Below, piece by piece: positions 27,247 through 33,561 of a DNA stretch of 64,000 nucleotides. Under the pieces are notes generated by a model. That model saw nothing but the letters and a program-made list of their open reading frames with translations. It did no database searches and had not been told where the DNA came from. Position numbers and translations under genes: made by a program. Source of the DNA: Paramoeba atlantica (lineage: Eukaryota > Protista > Discosea); contig CDRNVI010000169.1 in NCBI GenBank assembly GCA_977017575.1, positions 1 to 64,000 on the forward strand, given 5' to 3'. The first letter of the stretch is position 1. Each line of letters begins with the position of its first letter.

Positions 27247-27793
27247 GTCAGAATGCTGCTGTGTGGGGGGGTGGGTGGGTGAGAGGGAGAAAAGAAAGAG
27301 GTTTTTGAGATCAAATAAATAAAAAAATGAGAATATTGAAGAGTTAAATTTAAAAATTGTCTTGTCTTCAAAAAAAAAAAAAAGAAATATTTTTAATATT
27401 TAAAAAAGAAAAAGAAAAAGAAAAAGAAAAAATAAATATAAAGAATAAAAAGAAATAAGAAAAAAAAAGAAATTTTGGAAGAAACACTTTTATTTTGAAA
27501 ATAAAAAATTGATCTTAATCAAGATTCATCCTCTGCCCATCAGAAAAAATCTCTTCTTTTTTTAATCCTTTAGCTTTCAAGAAGGGGTGTTGGAGAAGAA
27601 AAATCCCAATCCATCTCACAATCCCTGATCAAATTTTAGTTCCAACAGACACTTTCCAAACGAGATTGAAGTTTCACAAAAAAAAAAATTGGTTCTCAAA
27701 AAGAAAAAAAAGGGAAAAAAGAATATTTCCAAATAAAGACTCTTCCAGTCCAAACAAAGAGAGCGACATCAGCACCAGCGTTTTCGCTGCTAT

Positions 27794-27817
27794 GGAATTG
27801 CTGGAAAAACACTTTTA
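27794..27817 (+). repeat. Left terminal inverted repeat
   Basis: 24/24 match to the reverse complement of 29801-29824. Confidence 0.95.
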
Positions 27818-27880
27818 GACCTGAGAATTAAATATTTGAAGAAGCAAAGAATCAAAATAAAAATCAAATTAAAAATTATT

Positions 27881-28747
27881 TTATTTAGCAGGTTTAATAG
27901 GATCAAGAGAGACAATCACATGATCATCATCTTTCTCAAAGGGAATCACAATTGTGACCCAATGAGCATCAGATGTGTTTACTTTTACTTTCTCTCAGTC
28001 TTGGTTAATTGGATAAGGGGAATGAACAAAAATTTCACATTTTTTCTCCTGAAGAGAATACTCATTTGCTTGGATCTTAGTGATGTTAGAAATTTCTTGA
28101 AGGTATGACACACTTGGGGGGGCAGATGTAAGTGCAATAGTGAGGCCATTTGTCTCAAGTTTTTCGATTGCAATTTTGGAATTGAGGAAACGAGAAAAAA
28201 TCAGAATCCAATCCTCTTTTGTCTCGTGGGTGAAGAAGAGACCTCCATCAGAAAGACAAGATCTAACACTTCTCTCAACAACCTCCTCAAGAACAATAAC
28301 CTCCTCCTCATCCCCCTCTTCCTCATCATCCAAGTTTTGAGGTGTATAACCAATGGCCACCTGCTCCGATGCATCTTTCCCTCAAGAAAGAAATTTTAGT
28401 AAATCCAAAAACTAAACTGAAATTGAAAAATAAAACAAACATTTTTCAGGGCGCTTAATACTTGGGTCATTTGGTGGGGTAAGCTTTGCAAGGCCATTAA
28501 GACGAATATAATCAATGCGATTGCTCACACTTTTGCCATTAACATCCTCACCAAGGCTGTGATCAAGTCTGAGCTGGGAAGCAATCTCAGCTGGGGACAA
28601 TCCTTTGTTATAGAGCCTTGCAAGGTCAGCTGTGTACCTGGAAAGAACACTCCCTCTCCGCTTGGATTCCTTTGTGGGAAAGGCTTCCTCTTCCTCCTTT
28701 GTCTTCGTTCTTTTTCTCTTTCCACCACGCAGGTTCGACGAACGCAA
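27881..28747 (-). pseudogene. Transposon accessory gene: NLS + HTH + acidic linker + HSP20/alpha-crystallin-like domain. No ATG (TTG at 28747) and one in-frame TGA (27995-27997)
   Basis: Exon 1 KRKRTK...LARLYNKGLSPAEIASQL...GKSVSNRIDYIR; 60-nt GT-AG intron 28381-28440; exon 2 ...HETKEDWILIF...NGLTIAL...SPYPINQD*EKVKV...HWVTIVIPFEK to TAA at 27881. Confidence 0.65.
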
Positions 28748-28816
28748 AAAAAAAACCAAAAACGGCGTTCCGAAAATTTCCTGCACCCTTTTTTTTTTGG
28801 CTATGAAAACACACAC

Positions 28817-28861
28817 AAAAGTTGCAGGAAAACGTCGGTCCGATGTTTTCCTCCAACTTTT
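28817..28861. promoter_or_regulatory. Imperfect ~21-bp-arm palindrome in the transposon's bidirectional promoter, containing TIR-like motifs
   Basis: AAAAGTTGCAGGAAAACGTCG-gtc-CGATGTTTTCCTCCAACTTTT. Its arms resemble the TIR core TTGCTGGAAAAAC. Function is inferred. Confidence 0.55.
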
Positions 28862-28876
28862 TTTTTTTTTTTTTGA

Positions 28877-29782
28877 ATGGCAGCAGAGACTGATGATGAG
28901 TGGATTTCTCTTGGGAAACGTTACACAAAGTCAATCCAAGAAAGAAATTTTCTATCCTCCTTTGGTCTTCAAGAACTTTACCTGTTTTGTGGGATTGGAT
29001 TCGAAGTTTGGACAATTGGCCAAAGGGGTGGGGCGCTTTAAAGCTTCTTGAAACTCTGAATTTTTTGAAAGATCCTGGACCAAACTGGGCATCCCTTTCT
29101 GCACGATTTGAACATGATCCAAAGACAATACAAAAAAGAATTTGGGAAACTCTTAATCTGATTGATCGTGCTCTTCCAGAGGTATTTTTTTTGTTATTTT
29201 TCTGTGTGTCACCCAGTGATTTTCTCACCCTTTTTTAAGTTTGATCTGTCAGATCAATTTGTTGATTGGCCTCACACTGTTCCTTCTGCTATGATTGATA
29301 CTTTTTTTTGTGTGATTGAGGCACCAGAATTGTTAAGACATGAGTACTATAATCCACATTATTATGGACATGGATTAAAGTACCAAGTTGTGATTGCAAT
29401 TGGCTGCCCAAGAATTTGTGCTTTGTCCCTTGGATTCAGAGGCTCTGCTTCTGATGTTGCAATTTGGAAAAAATCTGGGGTTTTGGAACATATGAGAGAT
29501 GATGAAGTCTTTCTTGCTGATAAATTATATCGTGGGGATCCTTCAAAATTCATCACTCCTTGTCCTGGAAAACGAAACGATTTATCTGAGGAGGACAAAG
29601 CCAGAAATTTTTTAATTTATCGAGCAAGACAAACTGTTGAAAGAGTGATTAAGAGAATGAGGATCTTTGGTGTAATTGCCAGTAAAAGTCACTGGCGATA
29701 TTCTCTTGAATTTCATCAGAAGTGTGTCAAAGTAGTTGGAAAACTCACAAATTTTTCTTTTCTTTTCAACCCACTTGGTTAA
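28877..29782 (+). CDS. DDE transposase (HTH_Tnp_4 + DDE_Tnp_4, IS5/Harbinger-like). One intron (29182-29239) and one -1 frameshift near 28945-28970
   Basis: HTH LLETLNFLK...LSARFEHDPKTIQKRIW. Catalytic-type motifs MIDT, GLKYQVVI, GSASD, LADKLYRG, RARQTVERVIKRMR. Confidence 0.9.
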
Positions 29783-29800
29783 AATCATTCATAAAGTGTT

Positions 29801-29824
29801 TAAAAGTGTTTTTCCAGCAATTCC
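29801..29824 (-). repeat. Right terminal inverted repeat
   Basis: TAAAAGTGTTTTTCCAGCAATTCC followed by AT. Confidence 0.95.
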
Positions 29825-29954
29825 ATTGAGCAAAAGGGCTCCACGAAAATTCGAGAAATTCGAGAAATTCGAAAAAAACTGGCCAAAAAAAAAAAGAAAC
29901 CTTTTTCTTTTTGCGTTTGGGAACCACCGGCTCGAATATTTTTCTCAACAAAGA

Positions 29955-30715
29955 ATGGAGTGTGCTTGGGAAGGTTGTGGGGAAAACAAGCATTTGAAAA
30001 AATGTGGAAAATGTAAAGCAGTTTCCTATTGTTGTGTTTCTCATCAAAGATCTCACTGGCCAATACACAAATGGTCCTGCCACTCGTCTTCGTCGTCTTC
30101 CTCTTTGTCTTCCTCTTCCTCTTCGTCGTCGTCTTCCTCTTTGTCTTCCTCTTCCTCTTCGTCGTCGTCTTCCTCTTCATCGTCGTCTTCCTCTTCGTCG
30201 TCGTCTTCCTCTTTGCCTGGTGAAGAACTTTTTTTTTTGGTTTTTGTTTTTTTGGTTTTTGTTTTTTGGTTTTTGTTTTTTTGTTTTTTTGTTTTTTTTT
30301 TTTGAAAATTGATTCAATAATGGAGGAGGAGACCATTTGGGTGAGTGGAGGGCTCTTAAATGAATCTCGGTCTCCTTCAGACCCAAGGAGAACTCTAGAT
30401 GGGGAGTATGTTCTTCTTGAACAAAAATTCAGTTCAAAAAATCACTATGTTCGAAAAGATTCAGAGGGAAATATCACTGGCAACATTTGTTATCATCAAA
30501 TTGGACAGTGTTGGACAATCAACCCTTTCAAAAGTGCGAGTCTTCGATGGAGTTTGAGCCAAATGGAACAAAATCCTGGTTCTCTTGAACCTCCCTTTGG
30601 AGAATGGTTGCAAGAGAAAGCTTATGAGATGGGAACTAGCGACTATCCGGAAGAGAATCAACATACTGTTGTCTTAGACAGAATGGTTTTTTCTTCTTTT
30701 TTCGAAACATTTTGA
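29955..30715 (+). CDS. MYND zinc-finger protein with poly-Ser linker and uncharacterised C-terminal beta-rich domain
   Basis: CAWEGC...KKCGKCKAVSYCCVSHQRSHWPIHKWSC is a MYND finger. A T-rich intron lies at ~30230-30325; its exact junction is uncertain. Confidence 0.75.
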
Positions 30716-31262
30716 ACTTCTTCTTCTCATATAATTATCAATATCGTTAGGGTGCGAATGTCAAACCTGCCAAAAGATCCTTGTAAAACAATATTTTCGC
30801 CAAAATAGTTTTCTCTGTTCCTGATTTTCTGTGAGATGATGGCGCAAATGAGAAAAAAGAAAAGGGAGATTTTTTTTTTTTGGTGTGGTACTCCATTGAA
30901 GATAATAGAGATCCCAGAACAACTCCATTTTCTCAAAAAGATAGAGGGAAGAGAGAGAGAGGGGGTAAATAGAAGTTACAGGATGATATTATTGTTTTGT
31001 GATATTTTGATGAAAACAGAAAACATTCAAAGATTTGAAAGTAAACTTTTTTTTGAGTTTCTTGTTTGCCAATGCAAGAAAAGGAATCATCACCAAAACT
31101 TTGTTTGTGGAAAACCTTTCGTTTTCCGTCACCGTTTTGTGTTTTAAACTCGAACCAATTTCAGAGAAAAAATTTCTTCTCACGCAGAGAAAAACCAGCA
31201 AAGTTTTTCGACTTTTCTTTTTTTTTGTTGTTGAGGAATTGAACTTTCCGTTTAGTTCAGTC

Positions 31263-32435
31263 ATGGGGTGTGGTTCAAGTCACAATGTCGATGAATCTGC
31301 ATACAACAAGAACAAACAAATCAACCGATACTTGAAAGAGAGCAGCCAACTCAACATTTCAGGAAACATCCGCCTTATGATGCTGGGCCACCAACGATGT
31401 GGAAAAACCACTTTTTGTCAACAGTTGAGAGTGTTGTACAGTGAGGAACCATTCTCCAAGGATGAAAAAGAAGTCTATCGTGAACTCATCCACGCCAAAA
31501 TCGTCTCTGCCTTAGCAAGGCTCTGCGGTGAAGTGTTGGACAGCGAGTCCATTGAATTGCAGGAAGAGAGTAAATTGAGGATGACGAATTTCGAAGAGAA
31601 ATATGGCCAGTTAGCCCCGATTGCAACTCTCACCAGATATGCTCTCAAGATGGGGTATGGTCGGACAAGTTCCAGTGATCTTCAAAATCCTCGCCCAACG
31701 TTTTTGATGAATGAGCAGATGATAAAAGATATTCTCTCACTTTGGAAGGATCCAGCCATTCAAGAATCTTGGCAACACACTACACCCAGCAGCTACGAGC
31801 TGACCTCCCCTCTCTTGGGATACTTCATGGACCATTTTCATCGAATCACAATGGTGGAAGAGGATGAGGAGAAAACCATCTCTTACATCCCAACAGCAGA
31901 AGATATTTTACATTGTGGGTTAAACTACCAAATTATTGAACAGTTCATTTTCCAGGTTGGCGACGACACTTTTGACATATACGAGTATGGAGGAGTCAAA
32001 CCAAGAGCACCAGAGCGAGATTTCTTGGAATATATGGCTAATGCAGCTCTTATTCTCTATTTTCTCTCTATGGATACATATGGGAGATATGAATCTGGAA
32101 ACATATTTGCCTCCGAACTCGAGCACCTCGACGAATTTAAAAAGTGCAAACGATTCCACAACATCAAAATCATCATCTTTCTCTCCAAGTGTGATGTTTT
32201 TCGAAAAATCCTCGAAGATAAACCCCTTTCCTCTGTATTTCCCGAGTTTAAGGGGAAGGATACATATGAGGGAGCGATCGAGTTTGTGAAAGAGAAGGTG
32301 AGAGAGAACGCGGGAGAGAGGGTGGCGTTTGTGGTTGAGACGAATTGTATGGATGTTGGGGATGTGAAGTATGGTTTTGAGAGTGTGCTGGGCACTCTAC
32401 GTCGTTTAACCACCATCAAACCTGCTGTTCGTTAG
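31263..32435 (+). CDS. Atypical heterotrimeric G-protein alpha subunit, intronless
   Basis: MGCGSS lipidation N-terminus, P-loop GHQRCGKT, helical domain (LWKDPAIQESW), YEYGG, LSKCD, TNCMD. 390 aa. Confidence 0.9.
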   Translation: MGCGSSHNVDESAYNKNKQINRYLKESSQLNISGNIRLMMLGHQRCGKTTFCQQLRVLYSEEPFSKDEKEVYRELIHAKIVSALARLCGEVLDSESIELQEESKLRMTNFEEKYGQLAPIATLTRYALKMGYGRTSSSDLQNPRPTFLMNEQMIKDILSLWKDPAIQESWQHTTPSSYELTSPLLGYFMDHFHRITMVEEDEEKTISYIPTAEDILHCGLNYQIIEQFIFQVGDDTFDIYEYGGVKPRAPERDFLEYMANAALILYFLSMDTYGRYESGNIFASELEHLDEFKKCKRFHNIKIIIFLSKCDVFRKILEDKPLSSVFPEFKGKDTYEGAIEFVKEKVRENAGERVAFVVETNCMDVGDVKYGFESVLGTLRRLTTIKPAVR

Positions 32436-32844
32436 TACTACATTCTCTCAGAGTGTGAGAAGAAAAATAGAATCTCCCAATCATCTTTTTTCCTTCCAAG
32501 AATCTCCCAATCTTTTTTTTCTTCCAATCTTTTTTTCTTCCAACCATCTTTCTCTTCTGGATTCGTTGTAAAATGGCTCGTTGTAAAATGGCTCATTCAC
32601 TGATTTTGAGGCCTTCTTATTCTTAGTTTCATTTCACCTTTTCTCCTTTCGCCAATTGATACTGTGATGGACTCCAAACAACCCCGGTTGACATCATTTT
32701 TTCATCTCTTGATGAATTTTGATCAAGAGAATTGCAAAACTACCTTCCCTTTTCGAGTTTTTTTGTCGTATTCTTTTTCTTTGTAATAATTATTTGCTGT
32801 CAAAAGTTGATGACAACTTCTTCTGTGTTGGGAAGACCTCTTGG

Positions 32845-33561
32845 ATGAAGGTGGAACTTGTTTTAAATGCTGTTATTGTGGTCATTCTTGGGTTTGGGCT
32901 TTTCTTCATTAGCGATGAGGTTCGCAATTCATTCCGCAGAATTCATGACTTTGCCCAGGGAGAGACAGGATGATGACTCTCGAACAAATCACACAAAGTA
33001 TTCCTGTGTGTGGTCATCCACAAACAACTCATTCCCTCTTTTTTGAGGAATCTCTTGCGATTGTCACATATCTCTTGCGAAAATGTAACAAATGATTGGA
33101 TTGCTTGTGCGGGGATTGATGCTGCTTTGTCGAGTGATTGCCCACCAACAGCGCTGAATGTTTCTGAGACCTTTCCCCTCATAATTGGTGATGAAGTAGT
33201 AACGTATGGTTTGGGGGGGAGGGCAAATGGATGGAAAGGGACCCTCGTTGGTTATCACGAGAAAATTGAAGCCCCAAACTGGAATGTTCATTCTGTTCCT
33301 CATGTGGAAGGAGAAATGCTCTTTTCAGGACACTCCCAACATGGTGGACTTTCTGGAAGTGGAGTATTGAATGGATATGGTTATGTTGGGATGGCACACG
33401 CAATAGCAAGTGATTTTGATGAGAGAGCGAGTTGGGGAGTCGTGATCCCAGCAAAGTTGATTCAACCTTTGAATATGATACACTTTGCAGAAAACAGTAA
33501 CGTGAAATCCTCAAAGAAAGGAATGGGGAGAAAAAGAAACAACTGGGAAAAAATAAAATAA
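32845..33561 (+). pseudogene. Trypsin-like serine protease with N-terminal TM anchor, disrupted by two frameshifts
   Basis: TM segment MKVELVLNAVIVVILGFGLFF, His motif SHISC, Asp motif IDAAL and Ser motif GGLSGSG are spread over three reading frames, with shifts near 32965 and 33065. Confidence 0.6.

What the first reader, a model, noticed from the sequence alone, without database searches (positions are those of the whole stretch)
27792..29826. Complete two-gene ISL2EU/Pangu-like DNA transposon with perfect TIRs and AT target duplication
Seen directly: 24/24 identical TIRs beginning GG, flanking AT dinucleotides, an intron-containing DDE transposase with D-D-E intact, and a head-to-head second gene. 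Established knowledge: AT TSDs mark the ISL2EU/Pangu branches of PHIS, whereas PIF/Harbinger elements use TAA/TTA. The known partners are YqaJ nuclease (ISL2EU) or Myb/SANT (Harbinger), and neither is seen here. Identical TIRs suggest a recent insertion, and the element may be an undescribed family in an amoeboid protist.
Basis: partly seen in the sequence, partly recalled or inferred. Interest (0 to 1): 0.8.

Follow-up and report, generated by a model that had tools for sequence, protein, structure and literature searches.

The report
Compact two-gene PHIS transposon, decayed copy
A 2-kb cut-and-paste DNA transposon of the Harbinger/ISL2EU (PHIS) kind is really there with perfect ends, but both genes of this copy are broken as assembled; its helper gene encodes an unusual DNA-binding protein with a small-heat-shock-like domain, and related elements from other protists carry the same gene.

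Summary
The element is real. It spans 2,035 bp (27792-29826) and has perfect 24-bp TIRs starting with GG and AT on both sides. Three other insertions in a metagenome assembly end at exactly the same bases. It carries a DDE_Tnp_4 transposase gene with one intron (D-D-E intact) and, head to head, a two-exon partner gene.

It is not a complete copy. The window copy lacks 4 bp (CTTC after 28966), which frameshifts the transposase at about codon 31. The partner gene has a CGA-to-TGA stop inside a conserved domain and CTG where a relative has ATG. No copy of this family that I recovered is intact.

The AT/GG ends fit ISL2EU. However, the transposase is only about 283 aa and has no THAP domain, and the partner is not YqaJ. 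No Myb/SANT domain is detectable either. The partner has a basic tail, a three-helix HTH and an HSP20/CS-like beta-sandwich. At least three families carry it, and one has two near-identical intact copies. Pangu makes ANT duplications, not AT.

No empty site was found, so AT as a target duplication is inferred. A transposase tree against named PHIS groups could not be built.

Verdict: a new variant of a known kind, of moderate interest. First-stage notes of this scan list other Harbinger-like two-ORF families elsewhere in this genome.

The parts
27792..27793 (.). Left flanking AT (putative 2-bp target-site duplication)
   Evidence: AT lies next to the TIR at all 12 ends seen in three families. 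No empty site was found, so its status as a duplication is inferred.
27794..27817 (+). Left terminal inverted repeat, 24 bp, starts GG
   Evidence: Exact match to the right TIR; 0 matches expected by chance. The homology boundary with other copies is at 27792.
27881..28380 (-). Partner gene exon 2: acidic linker plus HSP20/CS-like beta-sandwich domain, with a premature in-frame TGA at 27995-27997
   Evidence: BLASTP to the intact relative P0160 gives E=4e-8. The 37 codons after the TGA align colinearly at E=9e-5. Two copies have CAA and three have TGA at this codon, which points to an ancestral CGA. The fold assignment comes from the P0160 model.
28381..28440 (-). Partner gene intron: 60 nt, GT..AG, phase 1, splits a Trp codon
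   Evidence: Three families have the intron at the same position and phase.
28441..28732 (-). Partner gene exon 1: basic (NLS-like) tail plus three-helix HTH; it begins with CTG where relative L002 has ATG
   Evidence: BLASTP to the L005 partner gives E=1e-8. The AF2 model shows three helices at residues 35-45, 50-61 and 69-82. There is no in-frame ATG.
28733..28876 (.). Divergent intergenic (promoter) region holding an inverted pair of TIR-like motifs TGCAGGAAA at 28777-28785(-) and 28823-28831(+)
   Evidence: Inverted repeat I3. Four of the five TGCWGGAAA matches in the 64-kb window lie in this element.
28877..29181 (+). Transposase exon 1 (N-terminal HTH-type domain), frameshifted by loss of CTTC after 28966
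   Evidence: L003 and L001a have the 4 bp. Relatives L002, P0009, P0016 and P0028 match the frame that includes the 4 bp.
29182..29239 (+). Transposase intron: 58 nt, GT..AG, phase 0
   Evidence: Read directly from the sequence. The junction is colinear with the intronless P0009, and L002 has an intron at the same site.
29240..29782 (+). Transposase exon 2: DDE catalytic domain (D20, D94, E134 of the exon) and stop codon
   Evidence: Pfam DDE_Tnp_4 at E=3.6e-23. The spacing fits the PHIS core signature except for the K-D spacing.
29801..29824 (-). Right terminal inverted repeat, 24 bp
29825..29826 (.). Right flanking AT (putative target-site duplication)

Best explanation
This is a full-length but coding-defective copy of a compact (about 2.0 kb) cut-and-paste DNA transposon of the PHIS superfamily (PIF/Harbinger-ISL2EU-Spy).

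In its working form, the family makes two proteins from a divergent promoter.
- The first is a transposase of about 283 aa. It has an N-terminal HTH-type domain and a DDE_Tnp_4 RNase-H-like catalytic domain. It cuts at the GG-starting TIRs and inserts at AT dinucleotides, probably duplicating the AT (inferred).
- The second is a partner of about 262 aa. It has a basic NLS-like tail, a three-helix HTH and an HSP20/CS-like beta-sandwich.

By analogy with the Myb-like partner of Harbinger elements, I infer that the partner binds element DNA and recruits or escorts the transposase, with the beta-sandwich serving as the protein-contact module.

As assembled, the window copy cannot supply either protein. 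The transposase has a 4-bp frameshift. The partner has a CGA-to-TGA stop inside the beta-sandwich and CTG at the start position. Its termini are intact, so it could move only if an intact copy supplied the proteins in trans.

Shown: the element's boundaries, its multiple copies, the domains, the lesions, and conservation of the two-gene layout. Inferred: AT as a duplication, the partner's role, and mobilisation in trans.
For: TIRs and boundaries:
- The TIRs are exact and unique in the window.
- Independent copies at other loci (L001a at 96% identity, L004, and the fragment L001b) end at exactly the same bases, with AT outside.

Transposase:
- DDE_Tnp_4 hit at E=3.6e-23.
- A profile search found a small family: 937 proteins at E<=1e-3 among 1.84 billion. 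The full-length members among the best 150 are about 280-340 aa (none exceeds 341 aa), and the eight checked with Pfam show only DDE_Tnp_4/DDE_Tnp_1.

Conserved two-gene layout:
- L005 and L006 are two insertions, 99.86% identical over 2.18 kb, with different flanks and both genes intact.
- L010 is a 2.88-kb relative with 44-bp TIRs.
- The contig carrying P0002 has the same ORF pattern.
- The partner intron has the same position and phase in three families.

Partner domains:
- The C-terminal domain model has pLDDT 73 (core 80-93) and pTM 0.63.
- All leading PDB and AFDB matches are sHSP alpha-crystallin or CS domains: VIA Z up to 8.3 with 77-100 residues aligned, and Foldseek probabilities of 0.9-1.0.
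- The N-terminal domain model is a three-helix HTH.

Lesions:
-.
Against: - No empty site was found, so AT could be the first two bases of the element rather than a duplication.
- The lesions rest on assemblies only. The two assemblies of this locus disagree at 14 positions inside the element, mostly at CpG, which could be consensus error at methylated sites.
- Fold-match statistics are middling: Foldseek E is about 0.05 against PDB, and Z of about 8 is near the tool's stated background level.
- The model is of a relative that shares 22-26% identity with the window protein.
- Nothing tests what the partner actually does.
Confidence: 0.75

Rival explanations
1. The copy is in fact intact and recently inserted. 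The frameshift and stop would then be assembly or consensus errors in a methylated repeat.
For: - The two assemblies of the same locus differ only inside the element. Where one has a lesion, the other has the intact state: CTTC is present in L003, and the three CGA codons that read TGA in L003 are CGA in the window.
- The flanks differ only by single-base homopolymer indels, typical of error-prone long reads.
- No listed run held the four sampled words that span the 4-bp deletion (weak evidence).
Against: - The partner-gene TGA is shared by the window, L003 and a copy at another locus, L004.
- CTG at the partner start is shared by all three copies that cover it.
- A 4-bp non-homopolymer deletion is not a typical consensus error.
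- Each assembly has private changes, as real alleles would.
Confidence: 0.15
2. AT is the outermost part of the TIR, and the element inserts without any target duplication, as Spy elements do, or with an unrecognised one.
For: - AT is palindromic, so it fits either reading.
- It is invariant at 12 of 12 ends in three families, whereas the next bases differ: GG, GG and CC in L010. Terminal bases of transposons are usually the most conserved.
- No empty site was found.
Against: - All described PHIS groups except Spy make duplications. ISL2EU is reported with AT duplications, GG-starting TIRs and an A|AT|T target.
- Here the base before the left AT is A at 4 of 6 sites and the base after the right AT is T at 3 of 4 (counting the window and L005 families; L010's single-base flanks, T and G, not included), which fits that target.
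- The flanks are not AAA/TTT, as Spy would require.
Confidence: 0.27
3. It is an ordinary ISL2EU-group member that has been shortened.
For: AT flanks and GG-starting TIRs.
Against: - No THAP domain and no YqaJ gene are present in the window element. The intact relative L005 and the other full-length transposases checked also show no THAP domain, and L005's partner has no Pfam (YqaJ) match.
- Intact relatives are 2.2-2.9 kb, against about 4.8 kb for ISL2EU.
- None of the best 150 transposase relatives exceeds 341 aa.
- ISL2EU was reported only from animals.
Confidence: 0.1
4. The partner's HTH is a highly diverged Myb/SANT-type repeat. The element would then be a Harbinger/Nuwa-type two-gene element that has changed its target site.
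For: - My own reading of the alignment sees a Myb-like spacing: an aromatic residue, acidic residues and L in helix 1; an 'EIA..L' motif in helix 2; and 'R..Y' in helix 3.
- A trihelix factor and two Myb-related plant factors (ARR20, PCL1) appear among weak fold matches.
- Its transposase, an HTH plus DDE with no zinc finger, is of the Harbinger type.
Against: - No Myb or SANT Pfam hit appears even at E<=1.
- The best fold matches are generic HTHs (small terminase, GcrA, Lrp, NarL), all with E>0.3.
- The three regularly spaced tryptophans are absent.
Confidence: 0.2

Closest known systems
ISL2EU group of the PHIS superfamily (Repbase; Han et al. 2015, PMC4482050)
   Same: - DDE transposase of the IS5/Harbinger type.
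- AT next to the termini.
- TIRs starting with GG.
- Flanks partly fit the A|AT|T target.
- Two genes.
   Different: - ISL2EU transposases carry a THAP zinc finger, and the second gene encodes a YqaJ exonuclease. Neither is present here.
- ISL2EU elements average 4.8 kb and were reported only from animals.
- This family is 2.0-2.9 kb and occurs in protist and environmental DNA.
- Phylogenetic placement was not tested.
PIF/Harbinger (canonical)
   Same: - Two-gene logic: an HTH+DDE transposase without a zinc finger, plus a separate DNA-binding partner.
- GG-type termini.
- Preference for AT-rich targets.
   Different: - Harbinger makes 3-bp TWA duplications. Here the 3-bp flanks are not direct repeats (TAT/ATT, AAT/ATA).
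- The partner has no recognisable Myb/SANT domain and carries an extra HSP20/CS-like domain.
- The transposase is shorter, at about 283 aa.
Pangu (= Harbinger2 in Repbase)
   Same: - Transposase with only a DDE domain.
- In one section of PMC4482050 the second ORF is described as having no known motif.
- TIRs start with AG or GG.
   Different: Pangu makes 3-bp ANT duplications, confirmed by empty sites. The flanks here do not fit that.
Spy
   Same: PHIS transposase with an N-terminal HTH and no zinc finger; small elements.
   Different: Spy has a single gene, makes no duplication, and inserts between AAA and TTT. Here there are two genes and the flanks are not AAA/TTT.
PHISTA (fungal PHIS with TA duplications; Kojima 2025, PMC12730594)
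   Same: A PHIS lineage with a 2-bp duplication and a non-Myb extra protein, which shows that such variants exist.
   Different: PHISTA makes TA rather than AT duplications, is found in Pucciniales fungi, and often carries TET/JBP.

Membership tests
PHIS superfamily | DDE transposase alignable with the IS5/Harbinger catalytic core (DDE_Tnp_4; signature D..K..D..D..P..R(3)E) | tested here: met
   Pfam DDE_Tnp_4 at E=3.6e-23. D20, K47, D72, D94, P107, R130 and E134 of exon 2 have spacings 26/24/21/12/22/3. The published signature is D(19-29)K(29)D(18-40)D(11-19)P(18-28)R(3)E. Only the K-D spacing differs (24 against 29).
PHIS superfamily | TIR-bounded cut-and-paste element present in multiple copies | tested here: met
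   Perfect 24-bp TIRs. Four insertion loci share identical boundaries.
ISL2EU | 2-bp AT target-site duplication | tested here: inconclusive
   AT lies at 12 of 12 ends in three related families. No empty site was found in the held DNA or in the metagenome scan.
ISL2EU | TIR starts with GG | tested here: met
   GGAATTGC... in the window family and GGGG... in L005/L006. The L010 relative starts with CC.
ISL2EU | THAP zinc finger in the transposase | tested here: not met
   Pfam shows only DDE_Tnp_4/DDE_Tnp_1 in the window pieces and in eight full-length relatives of 279-341 aa.
ISL2EU | Second ORF with a YqaJ exonuclease domain | tested here: not met
   The partner exons and the intact relative P0160 have no Pfam hit. 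The predicted fold is an HTH plus an HSP20/CS-like sandwich.
ISL2EU | Transposase groups with the ISL2EU clade in a tree | not testable with these tools
   No labelled Repbase or ISfinder reference sequences could be obtained.
PIF/Harbinger | 3-bp TWA target-site duplication | tested here: not met
   The three bases outside GG..CC are TAT/ATT (window) and AAT/ATA (L001a), which are not direct repeats.
PIF/Harbinger | [quoted passage not shown] | tested here: inconclusive
   No Pfam Myb/SANT hit. The model is a three-helix HTH with only generic matches.
Pangu | 3-bp ANT target-site duplication | tested here: not met
   Same flanks as for the PIF/Harbinger TWA row above. Definition from PMC4482050.
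Spy | Single gene, no duplication, insertion between AAA and TTT | tested here: not met
   There are two genes. The flanks are gct/tga, tta/att, aca and ata. Definition from PMC4122938.
HSP20/alpha-crystallin - CS (p23-like) fold, partner C-terminal domain | Seven- to eight-stranded beta-sandwich superposable on ACD/CS domains | tested here: met
   The model of relative P0160 has core pLDDT 80-93. All top 50 VIA matches are sHSP or CS domains, with Z 6.4-8.3 and 73-104 residues aligned. AFDB hits named 'SHSP domain' have probabilities of 0.92-1.0. This is a match of fold only: Pfam HSP20 gives no sequence hit.

The most novel reading that the evidence does not exclude
These elements define an undescribed PHIS lineage in free-living protists. 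It would have ISL2EU-like AT/GG ends, a minimal transposase of about 280-340 aa, and a new class of partner protein in which a three-helix HTH is fused to an HSP20/CS-like beta-sandwich. This partner would take the place of the Myb-like (Harbinger) or YqaJ (ISL2EU) partner. The intact L005/L006-type copies would be recently active.

A more speculative extension: the alpha-crystallin-like domain may link the element to chromatin or anti-silencing machinery. In Arabidopsis, alpha-crystallin-domain proteins sit with Harbinger-derived HDP1/HDP2 in the IDM complex.
Probability: 0.35. Interest if true: 0.6.

Novelty: new variant of a known kind. Interest (0 to 1): 0.45.

Why it matters
PHIS groups are defined by their target duplication and by the accessory gene they carry. 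A lineage that combines ISL2EU-type ends with a Harbinger-type transposase and a third kind of partner would add a data point on how accessory proteins are swapped in two-component transposons. It would also extend AT-type PHIS elements beyond animals.

The intact environmental relatives are small (2.2 kb, two short genes), which would make them convenient for testing what a non-Myb partner does.

The window copy itself is an ordinary decayed copy. Its decay pattern adds to the evidence that this genome mutates its repeats by C-to-T changes.

Tried and rejected
- **Read evidence.** Splicing, the frameshift and empty alleles could therefore not be checked in reads.
- **Deletion junction in runs.** I asked which runs hold the 62 bases around the 4-bp deletion. 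None was listed, from only 4 sampled words, so this is uninformative.
- **Relatives in JGI metagenome contigs.** The transposase profile found none.
- **Empty-site pattern.** A search for the L005 insertion's empty site found none.
- **Paralogous empty sites.** I compared all flanks with all held DNA and found none.
- **Language-model atlas.** Both partner exons gave only weak, unspecific hits of 0.65-0.78.
- **NCBIfam.** Only weak IS5-family hits appeared, so no subgroup could be assigned.
- **L008 partner homology.** I tested whether the 104-aa ORF next to the more distant P0066-type transposase (L008) is a homologue of the partner. It is not (hhalign E=0.22), so I do not claim the partner for that family. 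That ORF had been included as one row of the alignment used for the fold model.
- **Organism identity.** It could not be established.
- **MITE derivatives.** There are no further TIR matches in the window.
- **Literature.** No paper in the searched library joined ISL2EU with amoebae.
Full report
**Observation**

A 24-bp inverted repeat starting with GG lies at 27794-27817 and 29801-29824. These are the only two matches in the 64-kb window even with three mismatches allowed, and none is expected by chance. The repeat finder extends the arms to 29 nt at 97% once the flanking AT is included. AT lies directly outside each arm. Between the arms are a plus-strand gene whose second exon hits Pfam DDE_Tnp_4 at E=3.6e-23 and a minus-strand gene placed head to head with it.

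Protein look-ups led to contigs of one ENA metagenome assembly that hold further copies.
- L001 carries a copy that is 96% identical over exactly 27792-29826.
- L001 also carries a 266-bp end fragment.
- L004 carries a copy cut by the contig end.
- L003 is the same locus as the window, with identical flanks.

In every case the similarity stops at the AT.

**This copy is not complete**

The transposase is frameshifted.
- The ATG frame from 28877 stops at 29039-29041, and the conserved N-terminal domain continues in another frame.
- L003 and L001a both have four extra bases (CTTC) after 28966, which join the two frames.
- The joined frame aligns with the N-terminal domains of four relatives: L002, P0009, P0016 and P0028.
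- So the window copy has a 4-bp deletion that frameshifts the transposase near codon 31.

The catalytic exon itself is open. D20, D94 and E134 are in place, and the spacing fits the published PHIS core signature apart from one interval. The 58-nt intron (29182-29239) is supported by a gap-free alignment of the spliced product with the intronless P0009 and by an intron at the same place in L002.

The partner gene has two defects.
- An in-frame TGA lies at 27995-27997. Two copies read CAA there, so the ancestral codon was probably CGA.
- The 37 codons after the TGA align colinearly with the last strand region of the intact relative, at E=9e-5.
- The gene has no in-frame ATG. CTG (28730-28732, minus strand) sits where L002 begins with ATG, and all three copies that cover the site share it.

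L003 has CTTC but three CGA-to-TGA stops in the transposase. L001a has a mutated start, a stop and a frameshift. No copy of this family that I recovered is intact.

One caution applies. These lesions rest on assemblies. 

**What the family looks like when intact**

A profile of the catalytic domain, searched against 1.84 billion representative proteins, found a small family: 937 proteins at E<=1e-3 and 19 at E<=1e-30.
- Its full-length members are about 280-340 aa. In the eight I checked, the DDE domain sits at the C-terminus and there is no other Pfam domain.
- Nearly all come from metagenomes. One is a complete transcript from the amoeba Lithocolla globosa.
- L005 and L006, from two JGI samples, are two insertions of one 2.18-kb element. 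They are 99.86% identical, have different flanks, and have both genes intact. Their ends read flank-AT-GGGG...CCCC-AT-flank.
- L010 is a whole 2.88-kb relative with 44-bp TIRs that again follow an AT, although its TIR starts with CC.

All of these share the head-to-head layout. The partner gene's intron has the same position and phase in three families, splitting a Trp codon. The two-gene unit is therefore conserved and, in at least one organism, probably active.

**The partner protein**

Pfam finds nothing in the partner.

N-terminal part:
- It has a basic tail followed by a conserved stretch of about 55 residues. The window and L005 versions match at E=1e-8.
- AlphaFold models this stretch as three helices.
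- Fold matches are generic HTH domains with poor E-values. I call it an HTH and leave open whether it is a very diverged Myb-like repeat.

C-terminal part:
- I modelled it from the intact relative P0160 with a shallow alignment. Mean pLDDT is 73, core pLDDT is 80-93, and pTM is 0.63.
- The model superposes on small-heat-shock alpha-crystallin domains and on CS/p23 domains. All 50 leading VIA matches are of this fold, with Z up to 8.3. Foldseek gives probabilities of 0.9-1.0 but weak E-values.
- This agrees with an earlier first-stage note on the same stretch (s1-370006).
- The window protein matches P0160 at E=4e-8.

**Mechanism**

The transposase's role is standard for the superfamily.

The partner's role is inferred by analogy. 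In Harbinger elements, a separate DNA-binding protein is needed alongside the transposase (established knowledge; a plant domesticated pair, HDP1 and HDP2, still interacts, PMC5339849). Here the basic tail, the HTH and a protein-contact sandwich would suit the same job.

One small supporting detail: a TIR-like motif, TGCWGGAAA, occurs five times in the window. Four of these are in the element: one in each TIR and an inverted pair in the 145-bp divergent promoter region. This suggests one protein binds both the ends and the promoter. It is suggestive only, and the L005 family shows different intergenic repeats.

**Classification**

Han et al. (PMC4482050) give the following definitions.
- ISL2EU: AT duplications, an A|AT|T target, GG-starting TIRs, a THAP-HTH-DDE transposase, a YqaJ second gene, about 4.8 kb, animals only.
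- PIF/Harbinger: TWA duplications and a Myb/SANT partner.
- Spy: no duplication.

The ends here fit ISL2EU. AT is present at 12 of 12 ends, and the neighbouring bases partly fit A|AT|T. The coding content does not fit ISL2EU. Three-base flanks are not direct repeats, which excludes TWA and ANT.

AT is palindromic and I found no empty site. I therefore cannot exclude that AT is the tip of the element, and I give that reading about one chance in four.

Kojima's PHISTA lineage (TA duplications, non-Myb third protein; PMC12730594) shows that such mixed variants are already known within PHIS.

**Age of the insertion**

Identical TIRs do not show a recent insertion. The insertion is shared by two assemblies. 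Over 5.7 kb these differ by 14 substitutions and 3 non-homopolymer indels inside the element, but by no substitution in 3.7 kb of flank. The window and L001a copies differ by 64 transitions against 3 transversions, almost all C-to-T in L001a, with CpG hit most often. Other first-stage notes report the same transition-only decay of repeats elsewhere in this genome.

**Verdict**

This is a real, structurally full-length but coding-defective copy of a compact PHIS element whose partner protein is of a kind not described for the superfamily. I rate it a new variant of a known kind, of moderate interest. First-stage notes of this scan list several other Harbinger-like two-ORF families in the same genome; I did not check them.

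Noticed in passing
window 27658-33358 compared with L003 (same locus, another assembly): All 14 substitutions (13 transitions, 11 at CpG) and all 3 non-homopolymer indels between the two assemblies lie inside the 2,035-bp element. The 3.7 kb of flanks differ only by seven one-base homopolymer indels. Either the transposon decays by C-to-T changes much faster than its surroundings, or these are methylation-linked consensus errors.
   Followed up: partly
window 27792-29826 compared with L001:2544-4587: There are 64 transitions against 3 transversions, and 58 of the transitions are C-to-T or G-to-A in the L001 copy. By context, 33% of CpG sites were hit, against 7% of CpA, 6.6% of CpC and 2.9% of CpT. 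This points to methylation-driven or RIP-like hypermutation of repeats. CpG observed/expected is 0.40 in the window copy, 0.14 in the L001 copy and about 0.7 in the flanks.
   Followed up: partly
window 28777-28785 (-) and 28823-28831 (+): An inverted pair of TGCAGGAAA motifs in the divergent promoter region resembles the TIR core TGCTGGAAA. Four of the five matches in the window lie in the element.
   Followed up: partly
window 29948-30090 (+): The element sits about 120 bp upstream of the start codon of a gene that opens with a MYND-type zinc-finger motif and continues into a long poly-serine tract. The insertion is therefore in that gene's promoter or 5' leader.
   Followed up: no
L004:2110-3983: A Ty1/copia-type retrotransposon fragment (RVT_2, SH3_retrovirus) lies next to another copy of the element in the same organism's assembly.
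   Followed up: no
L005:1208-1425 and L010:1026-1760: The divergent intergenic regions of two related families hold runs of a short repeat of the form GTAATAA(C/G)C. The window family lacks these. They may be binding sites.
   Followed up: no
I did not send them to any search afterwards. A low-complexity 80-nt inverted repeat reported at 27389-27468 / 30230-30309 overlaps them and was left unexamined.
   Followed up: no
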